64,000 bases of DNA, taken from Laetmonice hystrix (Eukaryota). The stretch is from the NCBI GenBank assembly GCA_965235115.1, contig OZ249436.1:27218001-27282000 (forward strand). Reading direction: 5' to 3'. The notes under the pieces are model-generated. The model worked only from the letters and a program-made list of their open reading frames with translations. It had not been told where the DNA came from and did no database searches. Shown here in pieces: positions 43,105 through 56,535 of this stretch. Position 1 is the stretch's first letter; each line of letters opens with the position of its first letter. The position numbers and the translations under genes are program-made.

Positions 43105-44420
43105 TTAACCACGGCACTGCGTTAAAAAAAAGAGCATTGTCAACCTGCCCCATATTCTTTTATTTTAATGTAGGCTGTTAGTGTTACCCTAGGCAACAGC
43201 AAAGCGGAGAACTGCCCTTGCCTAGGCCAGGGCCTGTCTAATTAAGTTCAGTTGAGTCAGACTTGATTTTGTCTGGGACGTGTTGTTGTCACTCAATCCC
43301 ACACAAGTTTCCACCATTTTACATCCATATCACCCCGCACATACACTGACTCCACCGACAAGAGTCGACCTTTTAATACTCTGAGTGTGGGGCTCCTCTC
43401 CGCTGGACTATGGCAAGGAGGCCAAGGCCAACTGAAGAACCCAACTGAACTGCGGCTGAGCTTCAGCTCACTCGTCAGTCGACGGGGAGAGGCTCAGGCT
43501 GTCGAGACCGGGCACTTGAAACAGCAAATTGCATACCTTGTGACCATAGAATCACGTTCTATGGCAGATAGTCTGGTCGAGCCATCCGTCTTGGATGCAA
43601 GGCGTCTCTGAACTTTGATAGTATTGTCTTCATAAGTGTCGAGGACAGGCCATAATCTATCAAGAAAGCCCGCCTTGTAATATCACATCGAAGCCATTGT
43701 GGGCACCACAGGAACCGGAACAGACTAAGCACAGAGAGTACCACTGGAGGATAAATGTTCGCGTGCAACCCGTTTATACGGAGTTGACCTGTCTGGTTTG
43801 TGTATCGAAATAAAATAAATAGCAGGGTTTCCGCCAGAAATCTTTATTTGGATAGAGAGCAATACAGCTGCCAAAGTGATTCGGCGGGGGTTCTGGGGGC
43901 CTCCCCCACTGATAGGAGAAATTGTGATATTTTTAGAGACCAAGACACACTTGTACTTTGTAGGCCTACAAATCCTGAGTCTTTTGTATTATTAGGCCTA
44001 GCCCTAGGCCTATTTTTTATCTCTTCATTTTTTGGGGTAGGCCTAACCCTAGGATTTTTTTGGGGGGGGGGGGGTACGGAATTTGACCCTTTTACCCTCC
44101 TAACGGAAACGCTAAATATAGGCACAGGCTACAGTTAGGCTACTAAGTAGGCGGCCCAGGCCTACTAGTACTAGGCCTATAGCAATAAAACTTACCCCAG
44201 TAAAGATTGAACTTTCATTTATATTAACAAACAGCAAAAGTGTGTCAGATCTGCCCCCCCCCCCCCCCCAAAAAAAAAAAAAAAGAATCCTGGCTACGTC
44301 ACTGGCCTAGGCCTTTTTGTTTGGTCGACATTCCTCATGAAACGAAAAGAGGTAAGAAAGGCATAGCATCTATAGGCCTAGGCTAAACGGAGTGTACGAA
44401 TCCACTTTATCTCCCATATT

Positions 44421-44597
44421 NNNNNNNNNNNNNNNNNNNNNNNNNNNNNNNNNNNNNNNNNNNNNNNNNNNNNNNNNNNNNNNNNNNNNNNNNNNNNNNN
44501 NNNNNNNNNNNNNNNNNNNNNNNNNNNNNNNNNNNNNNNNNNNNNNNNNNNNNNNNNNNNNNNNNNNNNNNNNNNNNNNNNNNNNNNNNNNNNNNNN
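44421..44597. other. Assembly gap (N run)
   Basis: 177 N bases. Confidence 1.
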
Positions 44598-47295
44598 TTT
44601 ACTATAGGCTAGCCTACGCCTAAAAATTGTAGGCCTACAAAGCTTCAGAGACCAAAATCATTGTGCCCACGTGAAAGTGGAACCTGTGTTCATAGGCCTA
44701 TGAGAGTTATGAGGCTCTAATAGCATATCCCTTATTCTTGCGTTTACATATTTAAATGACTTTTTAATGAAAATAAACCATGCATCCAATGGCGTGCGGT
44801 ACCTAGGCCTATAAGATATGGCAGGTATGGCACGTGCCCTAGGTGCCACTTCTTGAAGGGGGCGCCACTACAGTTTCTTGTCAAGTCAGACAAACCCTCC
44901 TCGGATCGTGAGAAAAGATTAGTCCTTGCCATATAGGCCTAGGCGCTACTTTCTGTAGGTACGCTCCTGCATGCATTCACATTTGGCTAATTATTTAGGA
45001 AGTCGGATAAACTATGCCTTTTCAGTGCCCCCCCCCCCCCTCCACGGCACTTTCAGAAGAGACTGACGCCCCTCGGTGAAATTGGAATTTCAGTTGAATG
45101 CCATATTGGCTTGATTTGTGTTAGGCCTACTGTGTTAGCCGGGGAAGGGCCATCTTCTCGAGCCAAAAATACGCAGATCTCTTTTATTTGGGCCAGTTTT
45201 TGACGAAGTGCCCTGGCTGTAAACCACCTCTGTTTTTTTTAAATAGTCCCTCTGAAAGTCCAATGTTCCTTCAAAATGATCGACCCCTGCGCCCCTTTAA
45301 AATCTGGTTATGGGCCTGTCGGGGCAATTATTATTAGATTAATGATTTAGGTGTGTTTAGTCTAGGCTATACATGTCCAGTTAGCTATGGATGAAAATGC
45401 GTTTGTGTTTGTTCGGTTTTACACGTCAATATGAAAAGCACTCATCCTAAAACCTCATTGCTCGACAATATTTTCCTAATCCTATTTGTATTGTGTCTGC
45501 ATGCCTTGCAACATACAATATCACATAACCTGTTATAAACATAAAAACATCTTAGGCCTATCATTAGTCATCCCATGTCTGCCTTCTGTTAGGCCTATAT
45601 TCTCCTTTACTTCTCCTATACCTATAAGTTCTCCCTCTACGGCACTAAACATCATGATAATACGTCTGTTTGGAGGGGGGGGGGGGGGGTCCTGGGAAGT
45701 GGGAGGGGAAGTGAAATCGACCGGGCTTATTTAAGTGACATCGACCAGGTAAACTGCTGCAAACATGCACACAAAACCTATGTGGCTTTATTCAACTATG
45801 GAAAGCCATCACACGCGGATTGTGAAACAGGCCTAACAGGGATGTACCATTTTATCTGGCCGCTTTTAGAAAGTGAAAAATTTGCTTTAAAACAAACCGA
45901 ATTCATTGGATACCTTATGTCAAGTATGAAGAAATTTTAATCAATGCGCGGACTTATCAAAGACCCGAGGGTAAAATGTATAAAGAGGAGAGTGACTTCG
46001 ACGCTAATCGTGAGAATTCGGCGTTCGAATTTATCTGTTGAATTGTAACCTCACCCATTGAGTGGTATTTGATATAATTGTTATTCCATTTCCTCCGACA
46101 GGAGAAATGAGATTATGAAATTATTGTTGTAGTTAGACAATTTCGTTTCTCGCTTAGTTTTCAAGATATCTGTATGAAATTTGGAGGGAAGGTGTCACAT
46201 GTTTAGTTCCCCTTATCAAGCAGTATGTCGAACATGCAATGTCATGTCACAAAATAAATGCATGTAAACTATTCCTTATGCCAAACATTTTGACTGCATA
46301 ACCTCTGACCTTCTTAAGAATTGGGTCACACGAAATTTGGATAAAATGTAAAATTATGTAACATAAAACTGGACTTAGGAGGTTCGCAGTCCTGAGAGAG
46401 AAGTTGTAGTAGCGATTAATCGATCTGATGTGTTGGGACTCAGTCACGTGATTCCAAAGTTCGTCGATTTGGCCAATTTGGCAGATACACGTATTATGCT
46501 GATCGGGAATAACTGAATGAAGCTTGCAGGAACGACTCCTTGCAGCATGTACTACAATTAAGCTCCTTGAAATAATCACGTCACACAAGCTATGACCTAG
46601 GAAATGCAAAAAGCTAAGTATTTTTTTTCATTAATTGGACCTCTGACCCTGACCCTTTCTCAAATACGGGTCACAGCAGGAAGTAGTGTGTTTTGCAGTT
46701 TTACAGTGAACTGAGTGAAACTTTCCTGGAAGATTCATTATATGGCTCTCCTTATCCTGGACCAAGTAATGCGTTATGCTATGATATGTCATGGTGCAAT
46801 GAAGTCATCAACACGTCATGTAATTCATCACCTAAAAAACAAAAGAAATGAATACTGGTATACTGTTTTTATATAGCTAACCTAGGACTATGGCCTTAAT
46901 AACCTTCACAAAAATTTCAACTGTGACCTTTGACCTTCCTGGTAAAAGAGTAAAAGTTACAGCAAGTCTCTCTGTGGTCTTGGCTATGTTATGTAGGTAA
47001 TATTAGGACCCGTAAATAGGGACTATATCGGGGGCCGTAAACAAGACTGAGGCAGCTCTGAACACGATAAAGAGATGTCTGCTAAAATTAGCATAAAACT
47101 GGTGGGTCCAATGTAAAGTTTATTTCCGCTATTTCTGATATAAATTTCTTGAATCCACGATTATAATTACACGTTTTTCTTGTTAACCCGCTTGCCATAG
47201 TTTTACTTTATAGCCGAAGGGACACTGTATTTAAGTGCATGGCATTGTCAGTGCCATGTTGTGTTCCTGTGACATAACCTACGGAGCAGAACAAA

Positions 47296-50200
47296 ATGGC
47301 TTTGAGATACATCATCATCGCAATTTTGGTGATTCATAAAATAACAGGTTAGTTTTTACATTAAATATTATACTTATGAGGTTCTTGGCAGCTTTTGTGA
47401 ATGTGTTTTTATTGTATTCCTTCACTGTTCTGTAATTTTACCCCATTTTAATTTGTTTCGAGCTTCACTGCACTCTAGTTCCAGTAAAAACTATTCGTGA
47501 ATGCTGAAAGCGAATTTGACGTGTGTGGGGGGAGGCACTGCTGGATCCAGGGGGGTGTTCCTTATCATGTCGTTAGCTTGTCGTATCGTTAACTCCAATG
47601 TATTTTCAATGGGAATTTTAACGCACGACAAGATAACGACAGATGAGGAACGCACCCCAGGGGCGCTAAGGGGGCCTCAGCCCCCCTAAATTCTGGACGA
47701 TGTTATTTTTATCATACAATCATACAACAATATGTTCTTGGTGTGTCTGTGTGATATACATAAAGTTTGATATACTGGTACAGGGTACACGGTACGTAAG
47801 CCTATACTACACCGATCAGTAAATTTTATATAGGCACATGTTTTGAATGATTTGATGACATGCAATTACTAACATCCCATCTTCCGGCCGCTCCCAATCC
47901 ACCATAAACGTTCCTCATTTAAGGTTCAACAATAATTAAACAAATTCATTCTATTGCTTGCTTTAGGTGTCTGTGGTCGCCACTGGTTTTTGGGCCCCAC
48001 AGTTCAAGACAGCAGCACGTGTGGGCAGACGGCCGAACTTCCTTGCCCTCACATTGAGTGCCTTCGGGGCAGGCTTCGATCTTCTGACGATGTGTTTGTG
48101 TTGGCATCGAATGGTATTCTGCAACACTGCACGGACGAACCGATAGACGTTTCGGTAAACATATTGGGATACAATGGAGTTCCACAGCTAGCATGCGAGG
48201 AAGGCCTCACTCATAAGTCGAATATCACTTCTTTCAGCATCTTAATGTTTGGTGCGACCAATGAGTTGTTCTTGGACATCCGCATTGAAGGCATTGCATT
48301 TTCTTCGGGCTATATACGTGGTGGTAATAACCTGGCATTGGAGATTTCAAATTGCATTTTTGATGCCAATTCAACACTTGAAATAGGGGCGGGGCAGTCC
48401 GTCCACTCTACGATTTTGCCATGCCAATCATTGTTCTTAACGTTGAAGTCTACAATCTCTTACTCTATTTTGAAGAGCTTACGGGATACGTTTCAATACC
48501 AGAATATTGTTTTAGAATGTGATAGAATATACTTCAAAGCAGAAGACAACAACTTTTCAGACAATGGCATCAGAGTTCATGGTAGGGCCTTTCTATATAT
48601 AAAAGCCGACAACCTCACGTTCCATCAGAAAGGAGTCGCCATAACGAGTGATCATATGGGTGGAATCAGAGCAACTTGTCCGGTGAAAGCATGCGTTATA
48701 GAGATAACCAATTCCCAGTTTATTGGTCTAAAACCTTACAATGGCGCTATCACATACCTCGATGTAGATGCAATGAAAAGGGCACCGTTAGAAGTTCATA
48801 TCGTACTACCATTGGATGTTTTGCGTGAGCCCAACTCGGTGCGAATACAACTCTACAATGACTCTTTTCTGGGAGGCCAAGGCGCAGTTGTAGTCAGGGG
48901 GCATGTAGATGAACTGTCGATTCAGCATTGTTCATTTGAAAAGAATGCTGCACAAAAGAAGGGAGGAGCTTTGTATGTCTCAAACTCTATGCGAAATACT
49001 AATATCACCATAACAAACAGCGTCTTCACTGGCAATATAGCAGGTACGTACAGTGGACAGTACGAAAAGGGGGAGGACACCCAACCTATAGAGATAATTA
49101 CAACGGAGGGAGAAAAATTACAAATCATGTACTATTCGTTTACAGAAATGAGCGGGAAATTCTTGATCGCCAGATCCAGGGATAACAGCACGACTGACTT
49201 CCATGTAGATTCCGCGGGTCAGGGCGGTGCATTGCTAATTGAAAACGGAAAGGTTTTCATTTCAAATTGCTCTTTCGTTGGAAATATGGCCAGTCGATCT
49301 GGATCTACAGCAAAGATATGGTCTCGAACATCTGTCGATATATCACACTCGAATTTTATGACATATAACAGAATGACGTTTACTGAATTTCTAACAGTCT
49401 CAAGTTTGCTTCTTAGGATAGAGAATACCAGTTTTAAGTTCTTATCTTTAGACAGGGATATCCGTATACTTGGGTACATGTGGGAAAAAGGCGGGCAAAT
49501 AGATTTTACCCATGTAAGCCTCGATTGCCCTCGTGGATTTGAACTAAGTTCATATAAAACTACCGTAGGTTATAACCATGGCTCGATGGGAAGGAAATAT
49601 TATTCTTTCCACTACATGTGTGCGATGTGTGACGATGGAAAGTATTCCATTTATCAGGGATCACAATATATTGTTTTTGCTGACAACGTGACGGGACCCA
49701 GTTCAATTATGTGCAAGGATTGTCCTTATGGCGGTGTCTGCTACGGATGGTCTGTGTCATCTAGCAAAGATTATTGGGGGATCAGGACGGGAGACAGTGT
49801 ACGATTCTTCAAGTGTCCGTCTAACTACTGCTGTCCTAACATTATTGAGCCCACGTATTCCTCCTGTTGTGGACACAGGATGGGACGTCTGTGTGGAAAA
49901 TGCAGCAAAGGATACTCGCAGGCATTGTTCACGTCGACCTGCGTTAAAACAGAAAAATGTGACGATTACTGGATTATTGCAGTGGCCTTTACTAGTGCAG
50001 TTTTATATGCATCTTTTCTTATATTTCAAGGGATGTTCAAAACGTTCATTTTCATGCGTCGGAAACCATGCAAGGACACGACAACGTCATCTGTCGCCGA
50101 AGTTGACAGAACAAAAAATGAGGCATTAAGAGACGCTGATTCGTCATATGATTATACCTTCCTTATTTTGCTCTTTTATTATTTCCAGGATGCAACGTTG

Positions 50201-51355
50201 CTCACCATTAACACCACATATCAGACACCCTACCCGGCAGCCACACACCCCGCCATAAGGAATGCTATTGGTCAGCTCTTTCAGTTCAGACTGGAGTTAT
50301 ACCAGATATTCTTCCCCCTGGTGTGCGTTTTCCCTCGGTTAAAATCATTTCACCAGGTCATGTTCAAAACTCTATTCGTACCAATCCTGTGGTCGGTCTT
50401 GATAATTATATACTTATGCATCCGCTTTGTATCCATCAAAAGACCCAATTCAACATCATGGGAAACCCTGAGGGACCACTGCAGCGTGGCCTTCTTTTTG
50501 GCGTCGCTTTTCTCGTATCAAAAAATGTCGGTTAGCACCTTCATTTTGATCAAATGCGTCGACATACTGGGGAAACGGTACTTGTTCATTGATGCAACAA
50601 TTTCATGCTTTCAACTATGGCAAATCGGACCCTTCATTGTGTTGGTTATCTTCATTGTGCCTTTTTGCTTATTGCTCATGGCAGGACCAATATTGCTTCA
50701 GAGAGGTTATATTTCACATCGAGTTTTTATTTGTGCTTGTATTATCCCACTGCCTTTCCTTCTCTTCTGGCTGTATCGGTTTTACATGAGGCCAAATAGA
50801 ACTGACCCATCTCTGCCCATCTCGACTCAGGCCAAAGCCGCCTATGCGGCAATAGGCGGTGCCTTCAAGGAAATGTACCTTCCTATAATTAAAGTACCCT
50901 TCTCGTGGGCTGGTGTTCCTATCAGCCGTCGCTTGCTACTTATAGTGGCTGACGCTTTCATCAGTGACACACTTCAGAAAATGCTTTTTGCAAACGGTGT
51001 GTGCATTCTATACTTGTGCATCCAAGTGGGTGTTTGTCCATATAAGAATATCGCGTCCAACATAAGTAGCACCGCCTCGTCTCTTGCGCTGCTAACAATA
51101 GCCCTTATAAACCTTATCCGGTCAGCATACGAATCTGCTGGAAGGTTACCCGACGTTCCACACATGACAATAATTTACCATCTGCAAATCCTAGATGATA
51201 TTTTGCTCTTTTGGTTTCCTGTTGTTGGTGTAAGTGTAATTGTTTCTATGCTAATTCTACGTCTTTTAGTTGTCCTTTTCAAGTGTCTAAAACGTCGGTG
51301 CAACCCTACAATGCGTGTTTCAGTGGTAGAGAACGAAAGAACTACTCGTCTCTGA
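47296..51355 (+). CDS. Large surface protein: signal peptide + Pmp-like GGA/FxxN beta-helix repeats + Cys-rich module + ~9-10 TM helices, ~1146 aa
   Basis: Exon 1 47296-47347 (MALRYIIIAILVIHKIT, GT donor, phase 1) joins acceptor 47965-47966 in frame with the 3.4-kb ORF. Motifs FEKN..KKGGAL, FTGN, GQGGAL, FVGN; C..CP.GGVC...DYWG...CP..YCC...R.G.LCGKC..GYS; then hydrophobic helices. Confidence 0.88.
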
Positions 51356-51538
51356 ACTTTACCTTCGATCTTCCCTCAGCAACATGTATTATCGCCTTAA
51401 AAATTACCTAAAGATACATAGCCGTCGGAACCTGGGAGGGGAGCTGAGAAATTCATTCTGCCATTCAGGCTGGCAATTTTGCGTGATCGCAATTTATAAA
51501 TTAATCCGACTTATGGTATACCTACACGTGTTCGACTC

Positions 51539-51838
51539 ATGGTGACTCTACCATAAAAAGGTCTCTAGAATTATTGGTCAAATGACAGCATCTTTAACGT
51601 GATCGGTTGATTTGTATGGTCACTCTACCATAAAAAGGTCTTAGAATTATTGGTCAAATGACAGCATTTTTAACATTATCGGTTGATTTGTATGGTCACT
51701 CTACCATAAAAAGGTCTTAGAATTATTGGTCAAATGACAGCATCTTTAACGTGATCGGTTGATTTGTATGGTCACTCTACCATAAAAAGGTCTCTAGAAT
51801 TATTGGTCAAAGGACAGCATTTTTAACGTGATCGGTTA
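51539..51838. repeat. ~76-bp tandem repeat, ~4 units
   Basis: ATGGTCACTCTACCATAAAAAGGTC... at 51539, 51616, 51692, 51768. Confidence 0.9.
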
Positions 51839-52537
51839 ATTTAAGCTCCCTGCATGCCTTAGTAACTTCATAAATAAGCTAACTCTATTAACAAACCAAT
51901 GATGCGCCACAATAGACTGCACCTAGCGGTTTCCTATAGAGAGGTTTAAGGTGTCAAAGCCTTATTTCCACAGTGGAACTTTTGGACATTGCACGGCCGG
52001 TGACGTCTCTTTTTTTTATATCAGTTGAAATATTCAGTTGCCTCTGTTCATATGAAAACAGTATGTGAACCATTTAGTTAGTTATGATAAAGCGGCGAGT
52101 AGTCACACTAGAAAAGCCAAGTTCTATATACTGATATTTAAAATCATAATTTAGTTGAATGAACGAGTAAAGTTGACTCAAAGTCACCTCGAGTCGGACA
52201 CTGCTAGTTGGACAAGTGCAGGCCTCCCAGCAAAACCTATAAAACCCTATTTCTAACTTGGGAGCCTAGATTTGTTTAAAGTAACCTATAAACCTATAAA
52301 AACCTATGTTTTTACTCTGCCATAAACTTGAAAAAATTTTAAAGGAAATTTTAAAAATTAACCTTACCCAAAGTGTAGCTATCAAATAACCATCTTCCGG
52401 AGTTGTGATTACCACCAGTTTTAGATAGAGGTACTGAGATTAAAGAGCTGACAACATCTGAAGAACAACCGAAATCAGCGTGTGGTCTTGTGGGCAAGTG
52501 CGTTAGCTTGATGAATTGGCTAGTCAAAACAGGAATA

Positions 52538-53902
52538 TATCGGGTGGGCCTAAAAATTTTGTAACACTCCTTTTTTGACTGTAACTTCTATAATTTTTTA
52601 CCCTAATGTCATAATATTTGGAACATGATATCATCTGGTTAGTTGGGGCATGTGGTACGAATTTCAGATAAATAGGTCAAAATGTCTAAAAATAGGGTCA
52701 TTTCAAAACTGTACAACTCTACAATGACTCTTTTCTGGGGTGTCGATTCAGCATTGTTCATTTGAAAAGAATGCTGCACAAAAGAAGGGAGGAGCTTTGT
52801 ATGTCTCAAACTCTATGCGAAATACTAATATCACCATAACAGACAGTGTCTTCACTGCCAATGTAGCAGGTACGTACAGTGGACAGTACGAAAAGGGGGA
52901 GGACACCCAACCTATAGAGATTATTACAACGGAGGGAGAAAAATTACAAATCATGTGTTATTCGTTTACAGAAATGAGCGGGAAATTCTTGATCGCCAGA
53001 TCCAGGGATAACAACACGACTGACTTCCATGTAGATTCCGCGGGTCAGGGCGATCAGATTTGTATGTCAAAAATTGCAATGCCGTCCAGGCGTCCTCAGT
53101 AGAGTTGGTCCCGCTGTGTCTGTAACACTCTTTACTTGACTATAGCTTCTACAATTTTCATAGTTTGTCACTGATATTCAGGGCTTCATGTTATATGGTT
53201 ATTAGCATTTTGTGGTGAAACTTTTAGGCAGATAGGCCAAAAACTCTTTATGTGGAAATAGCCTAAATCAAACATCACATGTCGAAAAATGCAATGCCGG
53301 AGAGCTATGCGTCACCCACCGATTTCAGTTAAAAGGGAAAAGGTGATCGATGTAACCCCCATCCTGTTCCCTGTTCACTCACAGCCCTTAGTCTCTTTTT
53401 GAATAGCCCGGCTGATTTCCTGACTTCTTCTTGAGTAATTCCCTCCCACCTTTCCCAAATTTTCTCCATCACGCTTCAGTTCGATCTCGGCGAATTTTCG
53501 TTTGCGACCTTTATAGACTTTTTCAGACAGGGAATCCCAAACGGTATGGGGTTTAAGTCGGGACTGGCCACCAGTTTTTGGCAGGGGGCATTTCATACAT
53601 TTGACGTCACGTCATTCAAACACAGTGGCAACAACCCTGCCAAGAAAACTGGGTCATTGCAAAGAGTCACTGTACTACAGTATGACAGGACAGTTTCCTG
53701 CTGGTCTGGCATTGTAATTTTTGACACGAATTTTTAGAAATGGCCCTATTTGTAGATGTTTTGACCCATTTATCTGAAATTTGTACCACAGACCCCAAAT
53801 AACCAGATGATATCATGTTCCAAATATTATGACATTGGGGTAAAAATTCTAGACATTACTGTCAAGAAAAGAGTGTTCCAAAATTTGTTGGCCCACCCGA
53901 TA
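52538..53902 (-). mobile_element. Internally deleted Tc1/mariner element (TA TSD, ~170-200-bp TIRs) with transposase C-terminal relic
   Basis: TATCGGGTGGGCC / GGCCCACCCGATA flanked by TA. On the - strand at ~53340-53580, across frameshifts: ASPDLNP, VWDSLSEKVYK, FKKRLRAV, DGGYIDH. Confidence 0.85.
52712..53052 (+). pseudogene. Duplicated fragment of the neighbouring receptor CDS (source 48846-49226, 40-bp internal deletion)
   Basis: Near-identical to the source with ~8 substitutions counted by eye. It interrupts the left TIR of the Tc1/mariner element. Confidence 0.95.
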
Positions 53903-56535
53903 TAGAGGTATACATCCAGACTCCAAGATGATTTGTATACTGTGGTACAATGGTGTAATTTAAATCAGTTGTCATTATTATTAAGAAATCGAAGTATCAA
54001 ATCTTTGGTTCGAGAAAGATGCTTAAATATTGTCACGATGTACAACATGTAGACTTGTTCATTGCCAATTCAGAGTGACTACATATAAATTGTATAGTGT
54101 TACACGCAACAATATTATTAGCCTCTTAAAAAGTGCAATGCTCACTTACTTAAGGTCATTCTCTATTTAGCAGTGGTATCTTATTTAGAGGTGCAACTCA
54201 ACTGCTTGGAACCTGTTAACCCCGAAGATTAGAAATACATGTTTTGGATCCTATCAAGAGTTTAAAACATACATGTACATGTACTGAATTTTCTTTGTAA
54301 CCAGAATTTCATTTGTTATGTAATAATATATAACAGAATTGATGGTATCACTTGAACGGGATACTGTAGCAAGACTATTAACCTGTTTGGTGTTGATATC
54401 AATTAGACTGTAGTTGAACGTAAAATTTTATCTGTTAATTATTAGTATGAAACATGAATATGTATATAGACTAGGTTATATATAGAGTGTGTTTACTTTC
54501 TCCATAAAAATGCAAATTATAGAAATTAGGGACGTATGGTCCCGATTATATCAGTAGGCCTATAAATAAAAGTTTAAAAAAGGTTGCCAAAAAATGAAAA
54601 AAGGAGAGAAAAAAAAGATAGTAGTGTCAGCCTGCCACTACACTTTTCAAAGTACGTTGTAGGAACATGTAGGGTGCTAGAAAGGTCTAACCCTATGTTT
54701 GGACCGATGCAAAGTACTGACAGATCTTGTTCATCATCAGTGTTTTGAAAGTACGATAAACTAATAACATCTGGCGAATATCTAGTCGGACCGAGCTCGC
54801 CCCCTGTCGGCCGAGGGCCTGGAGGTATAGAACGTGTCCTCATTCACGACTGAGCCTAAGAATGCGGAGAAACAGAAGTTATCGGAAAAGTGTATCAATA
54901 CCTATTTATTGGTGGTTTATCTTTCGATGATTTAAAAAAATAAAATGACATTAGCCTGAAGATTCGCCCATGGTGGCCCCCCTTTTCAACTCTGCATGAG
55001 CCCCGGCTCATGTCCGACTCAAGGTACCCCCCCCCCCGTCCGACTCATGGTGTCAGTGTATTACGTTTTATTTGCGTAATAGGCCTATAATACAATTCAA
55101 ACTAACTATATTCCTATGGACCTGGGTTTGAAAAAGTTTCTATAAATTAATGAGGCATTGGTTGAAATTCAGTGAAGACTTTGCATATCATATCAGCTTT
55201 TCGAAGCATTTCGCGCTCAGACTCATGGTTACCCTACTCTATGTGCGTACTACGCTAAATTAGCATGAATTTGTCGAAGCATGTGTATTTTGAATTAAAG
55301 TTTCATAATCTTTATCCCCATCCACTTGCGTATCTATTTACAAGATCAACTAGGGGTAATTCTTTTTTGAATTTTTTCAACAATTTTGAAAAGCTGGAAA
55401 TCCAACAAAATGTTGCCTTGTAAACTCTTGCAGCAATACACTTCCACAATACTGGCCTATATCTGCTGTTTTGCCGTGTTTTTATCGTATCACATTGCTA
55501 TAGTCTAATTGTGATAGAGCTGGAACATATTAAATTGTATGCTAAGGTCTAGAGGACAGGCACACCAGTTGGAGACAGCAATACCGTTATCAGGGAGGTA
55601 AAAAAAACACTCCATTTTTTATATTAGAGATTTTATTTCACATGTCAAATTCCACAAAAATAAAACATGTATAGCCCGCCCCCTTGTGGTAAACTGATGG
55701 GATGGTGATGCGCATGTCCTTATATACACTAAGTGCTGAATGTGATAACTCTGTAATTCTCTCTATGTACAAGGTGTTGTGATGCCAATTTGGTGTACGT
55801 CTGACAACATAACCTGAACGTATGTACAATAAAAGTCTGCTATAACATGCAGTAAAACTATATCAAATATCTTTTGTCTCTAGGGGTATATCCAAGTGCA
55901 ATTCAATTTAACAATGTTTCAGGTGCAAAACACAAAGGGTTGCGGAGTAGAAATCTGACATAACTAATTGTCCGCGGAGCGTTAGATATTGGTAGGTTGA
56001 TGGAAATCCTTACTTCATAGGCAACACTTCATTTATATTACCGACTGCATCCAATACAAAAATTTATAAAACACTTTTTCTATCTTCCTGCACACTATAA
56101 AATGTCCCTACCACAAGACAAACACCAAAGTCTCGAATTGGGTATCAGTTACAACGTGCAGTCTTTGTTCGCTGTCATGTTAGGTGCAGTACTTGGTAAA
56201 GTGTGTCGGGTCAAATGGAGCATGATTGAAACATAATGTTGAACCAGTTTAGGACAAAAAATCAAGATGGATTCCGGTGAAGACAAAAAAATTACAAGTA
56301 GTAAAATTTTGCATCTAGGAAGGGGTCTCACTTTTACAACTTTTAAACTTTTTACGGGTTTATCTTAAATGCAGATCAAATGTTTTGGGTCAGGCATTAA
56401 AAAAGGATTCAATAAACCAAAATCCATTTTTATTTTTGGCTTTAGATTACTTCTCAAAGCACTCTTTTAGAGGAAACTCTATAAGAAGAAGAAAAAGACC
56501 TTTTCACATGTACATTTTTTCATTATGAAGTTTCC

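What the first reader, a model, noticed from the sequence alone, without database searches (positions are those of the whole stretch)
52538..53902. Piece of the neighbouring gene's CDS copied into the TIR of a Tc1/mariner element
Seen: 341 bp matching 48846-49226 (with a 40-bp deletion and ~8 substitutions) sits inside the left TIR. TIR similarity to the right arm resumes after the insert (ATTTGTATGTCAAAAATTGCAATGCC vs ...GTGTCAAAAATTACAATGCC). The source is 3.9 kb upstream in the same orientation. Inference: a templated insertion during break repair at a transposon end, a snapshot of how Pack-type elements acquire gene fragments. It could be mobilised or yield small RNAs against the receptor. 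The substitutions may point to another allele or paralogue as donor.
Basis: partly seen in the sequence, partly recalled or inferred. Interest (0 to 1): 0.7.

Follow-up and report, generated by a model that had tools for sequence, protein, structure and literature searches.

The report
Gene piece copied into neighbouring transposon
A 341-base piece of a gene's coding sequence was copied once into the long end-repeat of an old, short transposon 3.9 kb downstream; it is real but found nowhere else in the genome, so it shows a gene piece being picked up, not a working gene-carrying transposon.

Summary
Window 52712-53052 is a 97.4% identical copy of 48846-49226, with 9 substitutions and a 40-bp gap. 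It lies in the same orientation, 3,866 bp downstream.

- **Host element:** the copy sits at position ~175 of the ~205-bp left TIR of a ~1.05-kb non-autonomous, TA-flanked element (52538-53902). That family has about 800-1,100 candidate copies in the genome. All 29 other copies examined lack the insert, and the TIR resumes right after it.
- **Donor:** the fragment occurs only twice in the genome, as donor and as copy. The donor is an intact, intronless 1,133-aa ORF whose nearest paralogue is 32% identical. So the neighbouring gene, or an allele of it, is the donor, and the composite has never transposed.
- **Junctions:** there is 0-2 bp of microhomology on the left and 5-8 nt of filler on the right. 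This is typical of non-homologous templated repair or template switching.
- **Age:** the host copy is 5.4% from its family consensus, against 2.6% between copy and donor. The capture therefore happened in an already resident element.
- **Reads:** short-read contigs bridge the right junction at single-copy depth.

A transposase-made break, mobilisation and small RNAs are not shown. The Tc1/mariner assignment is probable (TA flanks, a C-terminal motif recalled from memory) but got no profile support. This is a new member of a known kind (transduplication, filler DNA) and of modest interest.

The parts
47954..51355 (+). Donor gene: one uninterrupted ORF of 1,133 aa. It has a beta-helix/PMP-like repeat N-terminal part, a cysteine-rich middle and many hydrophobic spans at the C-terminus.
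   Evidence: ORF list. Pfam gives Beta_helix at E 1.7e-5, just under the cut-off, and a weak Chlam_PMP match. About 10 intronless paralogues in the genome are at most 38% identical. 1,850 unnamed relatives were found in the full HMMER search.
48846..49226 (+). Donor segment (381 bp), encoding residues 298-425 of the ORF. The region is read through in frame with no stop, so no intron lies inside the segment.
   Evidence: Homologous PMP-like repeat residues occur in paralogues on other chromosomes, so the direction of copying is gene to transposon.
48875..48914 (+). 40 bp of the donor that are absent from the copy. The length is not a multiple of 3. The adjacent base 48874 also differs (A in the donor, G in the copy).
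52536..52537 (.). TA flank to the left of the element, the putative target-site duplication.
   Evidence: Every copy examined but one has TA on the left, and 12 of 18 (window copy included) have TA on both sides of TATCGGGTGGGCC...GGCCCACCCGATA. Because of the TATA palindrome, reading the ends as a TATA duplication plus TCGGG... cannot be excluded.
52538..53902 (+). Host element: a 1,365-bp copy (1,013 bp without the extra DNA) of a ~1,050-bp non-autonomous family with long TIRs.
   Evidence: (1,105 first-look candidates, all scored copies about 1.05 kb). This copy is 5.4% (K2P) from the family consensus.
52538..52711 (+). Left TIR, outer 174 bp, ending ...GGGTCATTTCAAAACTG.
   Evidence: Inverted repeats I1 and I2; family alignment.
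52712..53052 (+). Captured gene fragment (341 bp), 97.4% identical to the donor. It still reads as an in-frame ORF remnant (52740-53102, 120 codons).
   Evidence: It occurs nowhere else in the genome.
53053..53060 (+). Filler at the right junction (ATCAG, or ATCAGATT depending on where the TIR is taken to resume). GGCGATCA across the junction is the reverse complement of TGATCGCC, 55 bp upstream inside the fragment.
   Evidence: The snap-back reading is an inference; I estimate a chance probability of roughly 0.05.
53058..53095 (+). Inner remainder of the left TIR (ATTTGTATGTCAAAAATTGCAATGCC...), which pairs with 53708-53726 of the right arm.
   Evidence: I4 at 95%; family alignment; consensus arm comparison.
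53110..53300 (+). Degenerate third TIR-like copy, in direct orientation with the left TIR. It is part of the family's structure and is not specific to this locus.
   Evidence: D1/D2 and I3; 68-70% identity to the TIR arms in the family consensus.
53378..53596 (-). Decayed remnant of a transposase C-terminus. In the family consensus it reads ...SPDLNPMDYTIWDSLSEKVYK...KRLRAV...
   Evidence: The resemblance to the Tc1/mariner C-terminus is recalled from memory only; Pfam and PDB profile searches were negative.
53700..53902 (-). Right TIR, uninterrupted.
53903..53904 (.). TA flank to the right of the element.

Best explanation
A ~1.05-kb non-autonomous, TA-flanked DNA transposon with long TIRs, probably of Tc1/mariner type, had long been sitting 1.2 kb downstream of an intronless membrane-protein gene. 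Later, a break or a stalled nascent strand inside its left TIR (174 bp from the end) was repaired by copying 381 bp of the gene's coding sequence from 3.9 kb upstream on the same or the sister/homologous chromatid. The copy was joined back without homology, by end joining or by microhomology-mediated template switching. A 40-bp skip arose during that synthesis or later.

The result is a single, neutral, in-place 'transduplicate'. Its transposon ends are intact, but it has never moved.

Shown: the copy, its site, its uniqueness, the direction gene to transposon, the junction sequences and the relative ages. Inferred: the repair pathway and what caused the break.
For: - **Copy and site:** 341 bp at 97.4% identity with one 40-bp gap. 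Insertion lies exactly between family positions 171 and ~174, with the TIR continuing afterwards.
- **Absent elsewhere:** all 29 other copies lack it. The fragment is found only at the donor and here in 627 Mb.
- **Donor identity:** the next paralogue is 32% identical at protein level.
- **Direction:** the paralogues carry homologous repeat residues.
- **Junctions:** AAAACTG|TACAAC on the left has 0-2 bp of microhomology. GGGCG|ATCAG(ATT)|TGTATGTC on the right has 5-8 nt of filler, and an 8-mer across it is the reverse complement of sequence 55 bp upstream.
- **Age:** the host copy is 5.4% from the consensus against 2.6% between copy and donor. Poisson P(<=9 differences | 5.4% x 341) = 0.012.
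- **Substitution pattern:** 3 synonymous changes and 5 altered codons, roughly as expected without selection.
- **Reads:** the right junction is bridged by a perfect short-read contig at single-copy depth.
Against: - The repair pathway is inferred from two junctions only.
- The left junction is not confirmed by an independent contig in the pieces shown, and no long reads were laid.
- The age comparison assumes that a consensus of 17 selected copies represents the source element, and that rates are equal in both sequences.
- DNA and RNA templates cannot be told apart, because the donor has no intron there.
- A donor allele carrying the copy's variants cannot be excluded. If one exists, the event would be younger than estimated.
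Confidence: 0.7

Rival explanations
1. Transposase-linked capture: the element was excised or nicked by a transposase. During synthesis-dependent gap repair from the sister or homologous copy, the nascent strand left the element, copied the nearby gene and returned. This would be the first step in forming a Pack-type transposon.
For: - The insert lies inside a transposon whose two termini and TA flanks are intact.
- Filler DNA from nearby sequence is the classical mark of abortive gap repair in P, Ac/Ds and Mu elements, as cited in PMC6379663.
- A donor only 3.9 kb away fits such a local template switch.
- An earlier, untested note from this scan (s1-337709) reports palindromic insertions at TA sites in this window. 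These could be excision footprints.
Against: - The break lies 174 bp inside the element, not at the cleaved end.
- No element sequence was lost, whereas abortive gap repair usually deletes internal sequence.
- No inner transposase-binding repeat resembling the outer end was found: outer versus inner TIR similarity is no better than shuffles.
- The capture is younger than the insertion.
- No long transposase ORF turned up among 150 scored remnants.
- 0 of 29 other copies have a comparable insert at this site.
Confidence: 0.17
2. Two-step rearrangement: a tandem duplication of 48846-52711 (3.9 kb), followed by deletion of about 3.5 kb from the second copy, leaving only its first 381 bp.
For: The order A-B-A'-C, same orientation and the left junction 52711|48846 are what a tandem duplication would give.
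Against: It needs two events. The second would have to end within a few bases of the first junction, because the TIR resumes without loss. No trace of the second copy of the 3.5-kb segment remains.
Confidence: 0.04
3. RNA-templated or cDNA-fragment capture: a piece of the gene's transcript, or of its cDNA, was used to patch the break.
For: The donor region has no intron, so the copy is compatible with an RNA origin. The sense orientation and the proximity are neutral to this idea.
Against: There is no poly(A) and there are no target-site duplications of retrotransposition type. The piece is internal to the ORF and its ends are not at exon or transcript boundaries.
Confidence: 0.05
4. Assembly artefact: a chimeric read or a misjoin placed gene sequence in the repeat.
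For: The insert lies in a high-copy repeat, where assemblies are weakest. Short-read graph contigs collapse the two copies, with switches between insert-type and donor-type letters.
Against: - A perfect 127-nt contig crosses the right junction at single-copy depth.
- The collapsed segment has about 1.3-1.6 times the flank depth.
- The four clustered insert-specific variants exist in the reads.
- The copy has its own 9 substitutions and a 40-bp gap, which a misjoin of the donor would not produce.
Confidence: 0.03

Closest known systems
Transduplication into inverted terminal repeats: Turmoil-1 of C. elegans (Sela et al. 2008, PMC2572040)
   Same: An animal cut-and-paste DNA transposon with fragments of host protein-coding genes inside its terminal inverted repeats.
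   Different: Turmoil-1 is a Harbinger element with 760-bp ITRs. Its fragments are part of the element's ITRs and are seen in several copies, and the donors are elsewhere in the genome. Here only one arm of one copy carries the fragment, the donor is the next gene, and nothing has moved.
Pack-type transposons of plants (Pack-MULE, Pack-CACTA; Catoni et al. 2019, PMC6379663)
   Same: A non-autonomous element with intact ends that encloses a gene fragment. The older DNA-repair model quoted there, with acquisition before relocation, predicts exactly this kind of un-moved intermediate.
   Different: Pack elements are defined by mobilised, often multi-copy composites. The model Catoni et al. favour needs two neighbouring elements and aberrant excisions, but only one element of this family is in the 64-kb window. 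The superfamily and the kingdom also differ.
Filler DNA / templated insertions at double-strand breaks (abortive gap repair at P, Ac/Ds, Mu; polymerase-theta end joining; microhomology-mediated template switching). Named from established knowledge, not tested against a database.
   Same: The insert is copied from nearby sequence in cis, junctions show little or no microhomology, there are extra nucleotides with a possible snap-back template, and there is a second internal skip.
   Different: At 341 bp this is long for end-joining filler, which is usually under 50 bp. No element sequence was lost, unlike typical abortive gap repair products.

Membership tests
Tc1/mariner (IS630-Tc1-mariner) non-autonomous element | TA target-site duplication | tested here: met
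   All but one of the 18 copies compared (window included) have TA on the left, and 12 of 18 have TA on both sides of TATCGGGTGGGCC...GGCCCACCCGATA. The rest have point changes or truncated ends. Caveat: the palindrome TATA at the ends also allows a 4-bp TATA duplication with TCGGG... termini.
Tc1/mariner (IS630-Tc1-mariner) non-autonomous element | Terminal inverted repeats | tested here: met
   Arms of about 205 bp, 94% identical between the consensus arms and 84-90% identical in the window copy.
Tc1/mariner (IS630-Tc1-mariner) non-autonomous element | Derivation from, or mobilisation by, a DD(E/D) transposase of this superfamily | tested here: inconclusive
   The internal remnant reads SPDLNPMDYTIWDSL...KRLRAV in intact copies. 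I recall this as the Tc1/mariner C-terminal motif. Pfam on six natural remnants and a profile search of PDB gave nothing significant.
Pack-type / transduplicating transposon | Host gene fragment enclosed between intact transposon termini | tested here: met
Pack-type / transduplicating transposon | The composite has transposed: copies at other loci with their own target-site duplications | tested here: not met
   A whole-genome DNA search with the donor segment finds only the donor and this copy, with 2 candidates and both scored. All other family copies examined lack the insert.
Templated insertion at a repaired break (filler DNA) | An identifiable template elsewhere, with non-homologous junctions carrying microhomology and/or extra nucleotides | tested here: met
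   The template is 3,866 bp upstream. There is 0-2 bp of microhomology on the left and 5-8 nt of filler on the right.
Templated insertion at a repaired break (filler DNA) | The event is a repair product of a break (direct evidence of the break or of the pathway) | not testable with these tools
   Needs genetics or population data.

The most novel reading that the evidence does not exclude
The composite is a nascent, still mobilisable gene-carrying Tc1/mariner-type element in an animal, caught before its first jump. The break that let the gene piece in would have been made by the transposition machinery acting on the inner TIR, and the element could seed small RNAs or exon shuffling involving the donor gene.
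Probability: 0.06. Interest if true: 0.6.

Novelty: new member of a known kind. Interest (0 to 1): 0.33.

Why it matters
Capture of gene fragments by cut-and-paste transposons is well documented in plants but rarely reported in animals. The acquisition step is almost never seen with donor and recipient both preserved. Here both are intact, 3.9 kb apart and only 2.6% diverged, so the junctions can be read directly.

The junctions show a non-homologous, copy-type insertion into a resident element. This fits the 'repair first, move later' model of acquisition.

Two practical points follow. The locus now carries 341-bp direct repeats that could mediate deletion of the 3' two-thirds of the gene. 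The copy could also mislead gene prediction or read mapping for that gene.

As a single, un-mobilised and apparently neutral event, it does not show that this transposon family shuffles genes.

Tried and rejected
- **Closer paralogue as donor:** rejected. The DNA search finds only two places, and the best paralogue is 32% identical.
- **Polarising the 9 substitutions:** failed. Paralogues are too distant, and the word-based protein search found no relatives at all.
- **Naming the donor gene:** failed. Pfam is sub-threshold. The full HMMER search found 1,850 relatives, none of the five checked has a name. The Atlas was busy twice.
- **Profile support for a Tc1/mariner transposase remnant:** none from Pfam or the PDB profile search.
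- **Finding an autonomous partner:** none with a long ORF among 150 remnant hits. I did not try another route.
- **IR-DR structure that would put a transposase-binding site at the break:** no similarity beyond shuffles.
- **Two 10-bp identities** between the insertion site and the donor region (TCATTTCAAA at 49257, TTTGTATGTC at 48970): they point the wrong way to prime the observed copy and are within chance expectation.
- **Expression or small RNAs:** no RNA runs were found.
- **Joints 52708>53064 in the reads**: these come from other family copies and say nothing about an insert-free allele at this locus.

Full report
**1.

Aligning window 48820-49260 with 52690-53100 gives an unbroken match from 48846/52712 to 49226/53052. 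It is interrupted only by a 40-bp gap, where donor 48875-48914 is missing from the copy. An exact comparison finds 9 substitutions in 341 aligned bases, or 97.4% identity. Both copies are on the + strand, and their starts are 3,866 bp apart. This is far beyond chance.

**2. The host is a member of an abundant short transposon family**

The interval 52538-53902 has long inverted arms:
- 52536-52603 with 53837-53904;
- 52595-52708 with 53733-53846;
- after the insert, 53065-53083 with 53708-53726 at 95%.

A DNA search of the window's own genome (627 Mb, 35 contigs) gave 1,105 first-look candidates. All scored full copies are about 1.05 kb long. BLAST against 29 of them puts query 1-171 directly next to query 524-1365, with 2 bp between them in most. 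So 352 bp of the window copy are extra, and none of the other copies has them.

An alignment with 17 full copies shows the family sequence ...GGGTCATTTTAAAAACTGCATGTCAAAAATTGC... running across the site. The window copy reads ...GGGTCATTTCAAAACTG [TACAACTC...GGGTCAGGGCG] ATCAGATTTGTATGTCAAAAATTGC.... The consensus arms are about 205 bp long and 94% identical. The insert therefore lies near the inner edge of the left TIR, about 174 bp from the element's end and not at it.

**3. Superfamily**

All but one of the copies compared have TA on the left of TATCGGGTGGGCC...GGCCCACCCGATA, and most have TA on both sides. That is the Tc1/mariner type of target duplication, although the TATA palindrome at the ends also allows another reading.

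On the minus strand the interior holds a decayed ORF. In better-preserved copies it reads QKLVASPDLNPMDYTIWDSLSEKVYK...WEGIT.EEVRKS...KRLRAV. From memory this looks like the C-terminus of Tc1/mariner transposases. Tests gave no support: Pfam on six natural remnants and a profile search of PDB sequences found nothing significant.

None of 150 scored remnants lies in a long open frame. I therefore call the element 'probably Tc1/mariner-type'.

The family also contains a third, degenerate TIR-like copy (53110-53300, 68-70% to the arms).

**4. The donor**

The donor segment lies in a single 1,133-codon ORF, 47954-51355. It encodes residues 298-425.
- Pfam gives only a sub-threshold Beta_helix match and a weak Chlamydia-PMP repeat.
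- The sequence also shows a cysteine-rich stretch and many hydrophobic spans.
- The genome has about ten intronless paralogues of 1,100-1,270 aa, the closest 32% identical over the full length.
- They carry homologous repeat residues in this segment. The segment is therefore native to the gene, and the copying went from gene to transposon.
- A whole-genome DNA search with the segment finds only the donor and the copy.

The neighbouring gene, or an allele of it, is thus the donor, and the composite has never transposed within this assembly.

The word-based protein search found no relatives. The exhaustive HMMER search found 1,850 representatives at 25-36% identity, and none of the five I looked up has a name. 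'Receptor' is therefore not supported.

**5. Junctions**

- **Left:** ...CAAAACTG|TACAACTC. The donor has GCGAA before TACAAC, so there is no homology. At most 2 bp (TA) are shared, and only if the original TIR read ...ACTGTATGTC.
- **Right:** ...GGGTCAGGGCG|ATCAG(ATT)|TGTATGTC. This leaves 5-8 nt that belong to neither partner.
- **Possible filler template:** across this junction GGCGATCA is the reverse complement of TGATCGCC, 55 bp upstream in the same fragment. That would fit snap-back synthesis during alternative end joining. By my estimate chance alone would give such a match about one time in twenty, so it is only a hint.
- **Chance identities:** two 10-bp identities between the site and the donor region are oriented the wrong way to have primed the copy and are within chance expectation.
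- **No second binding site:** there is no inner repeat resembling the outer TIR end, so nothing suggests a transposase-binding site at the break.

**6. Relative age**

The window copy differs by 5.4% (K2P) from a leave-one-out consensus of 17 full copies, which is typical for the family's range of 3.6-6.5%. Copy and donor differ by 2.6% in total.

If the capture were as old as the insertion, about 18 changes would be expected in the copy alone. Nine or fewer has a Poisson probability of 0.012. The nine differences comprise three synonymous changes and five altered codons, roughly the neutral pattern.

So the fragment entered an element that was already resident. This argues against capture during the original integration. 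It does not exclude a later excision attempt.

**7. Reads**

Only three runs of one sample hold the stretch, kept as short-read graph contigs, and none is RNA. Laid on 48500-54100, they show:
- a 127-nt contig covering 53023-53149 with no mismatch, at depth 56.8 against 51-65 for single-copy flanks, which bridges the right junction;
- the shared segment at about 1.3-1.6 times flank depth in two runs;
- in one run, a contig anchored in the donor's upstream sequence that carries the copy's letters at 49016, 49021, 49032 and 49037.

The last point is what bubble-popping between two near-identical copies gives. It shows that both variant sets exist in the sample. It cannot exclude a donor allele with those letters.

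The left junction was not among the pieces shown, and no long reads were available. The joints that skip 52708-53064 come from other family copies.

**8. Mechanism**

The best reading is a one-off templated insertion. A break or a disengaged nascent strand in the TIR copied 381 bp from 3.9 kb upstream, on the same or a sister/homologous molecule, and was rejoined without homology. The 40-bp skip was either a second slip or a later deletion.

I give it about 0.17, for three reasons: the break is internal, no element sequence was lost, and no other copy shows an insert there.

A tandem duplication followed by deletion needs two precisely placed events. An RNA template cannot be excluded because the donor has no intron in that segment. 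An assembly artefact is unlikely given the junction contig and the copy's own substitutions.

**9. Comparison with known cases**

- **Turmoil-1 of C. elegans** is the closest animal precedent. It carries fragments of rsp-2 and cpg-3 in its ITRs (PMC2572040). That element is a Harbinger, and its fragments are part of the element's ITRs.
- **Plant Pack-type elements** are defined by mobilised composites. Catoni et al. (PMC6379663) note that acquisition itself has not been observed. They contrast a repair-before-relocation model with their own two-element model.
- **This locus** looks like the intermediate the repair model predicts. It fails the defining test of a Pack element, because it has not moved, and only one element of the family is in the window.

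**10. Verdict**

This is a real feature and a tidy example of a known kind of event. It has no evidence of function or mobility, so its interest is modest.

Noticed in passing
window 47954-51355, with paralogues at L045-L055: The donor belongs to a family of intronless genes of about 1,100-1,270 aa, with a beta-helix/PMP-like repeat part, a cysteine-rich region and about 10 membrane spans. There are about 10 copies in this genome. The exhaustive protein library holds 1,850 relatives at 25-36% identity, yet Pfam gives no match above its cut-off, none of the relatives checked has a name, and the word-based search found nothing.
   Followed up: partly
window 53110-53300, and all family copies: The transposon family carries a third, degenerate copy of its own TIR (68-70% identical) directly after the left TIR, in the same orientation. 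The left end is therefore a tandem of two TIR-like units.
   Followed up: partly
window 51539-51842: Four tandem copies of a 76-bp unit (94% matches) lie between the donor gene's stop codon and the transposon.
   Followed up: no
flanks of family copies L002-L030: In most copies the base after the right-hand TA flank is T (..GATA|TA|t), while the base before the left TA varies. This asymmetry is not explained by a simple TA target.
   Followed up: no
window ~44420-44600: A run of N (assembly gap or masked stretch) lies 3.4 kb upstream of the donor ORF. It was left untouched.
   Followed up: no
L008:1479-1501 and L012, L027 at the same TIR position: A few other family copies have small indels (11-21 bp) at or near the same A/T-rich TIR position where the window copy carries the gene fragment. 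None has a large insert.
   Followed up: partly
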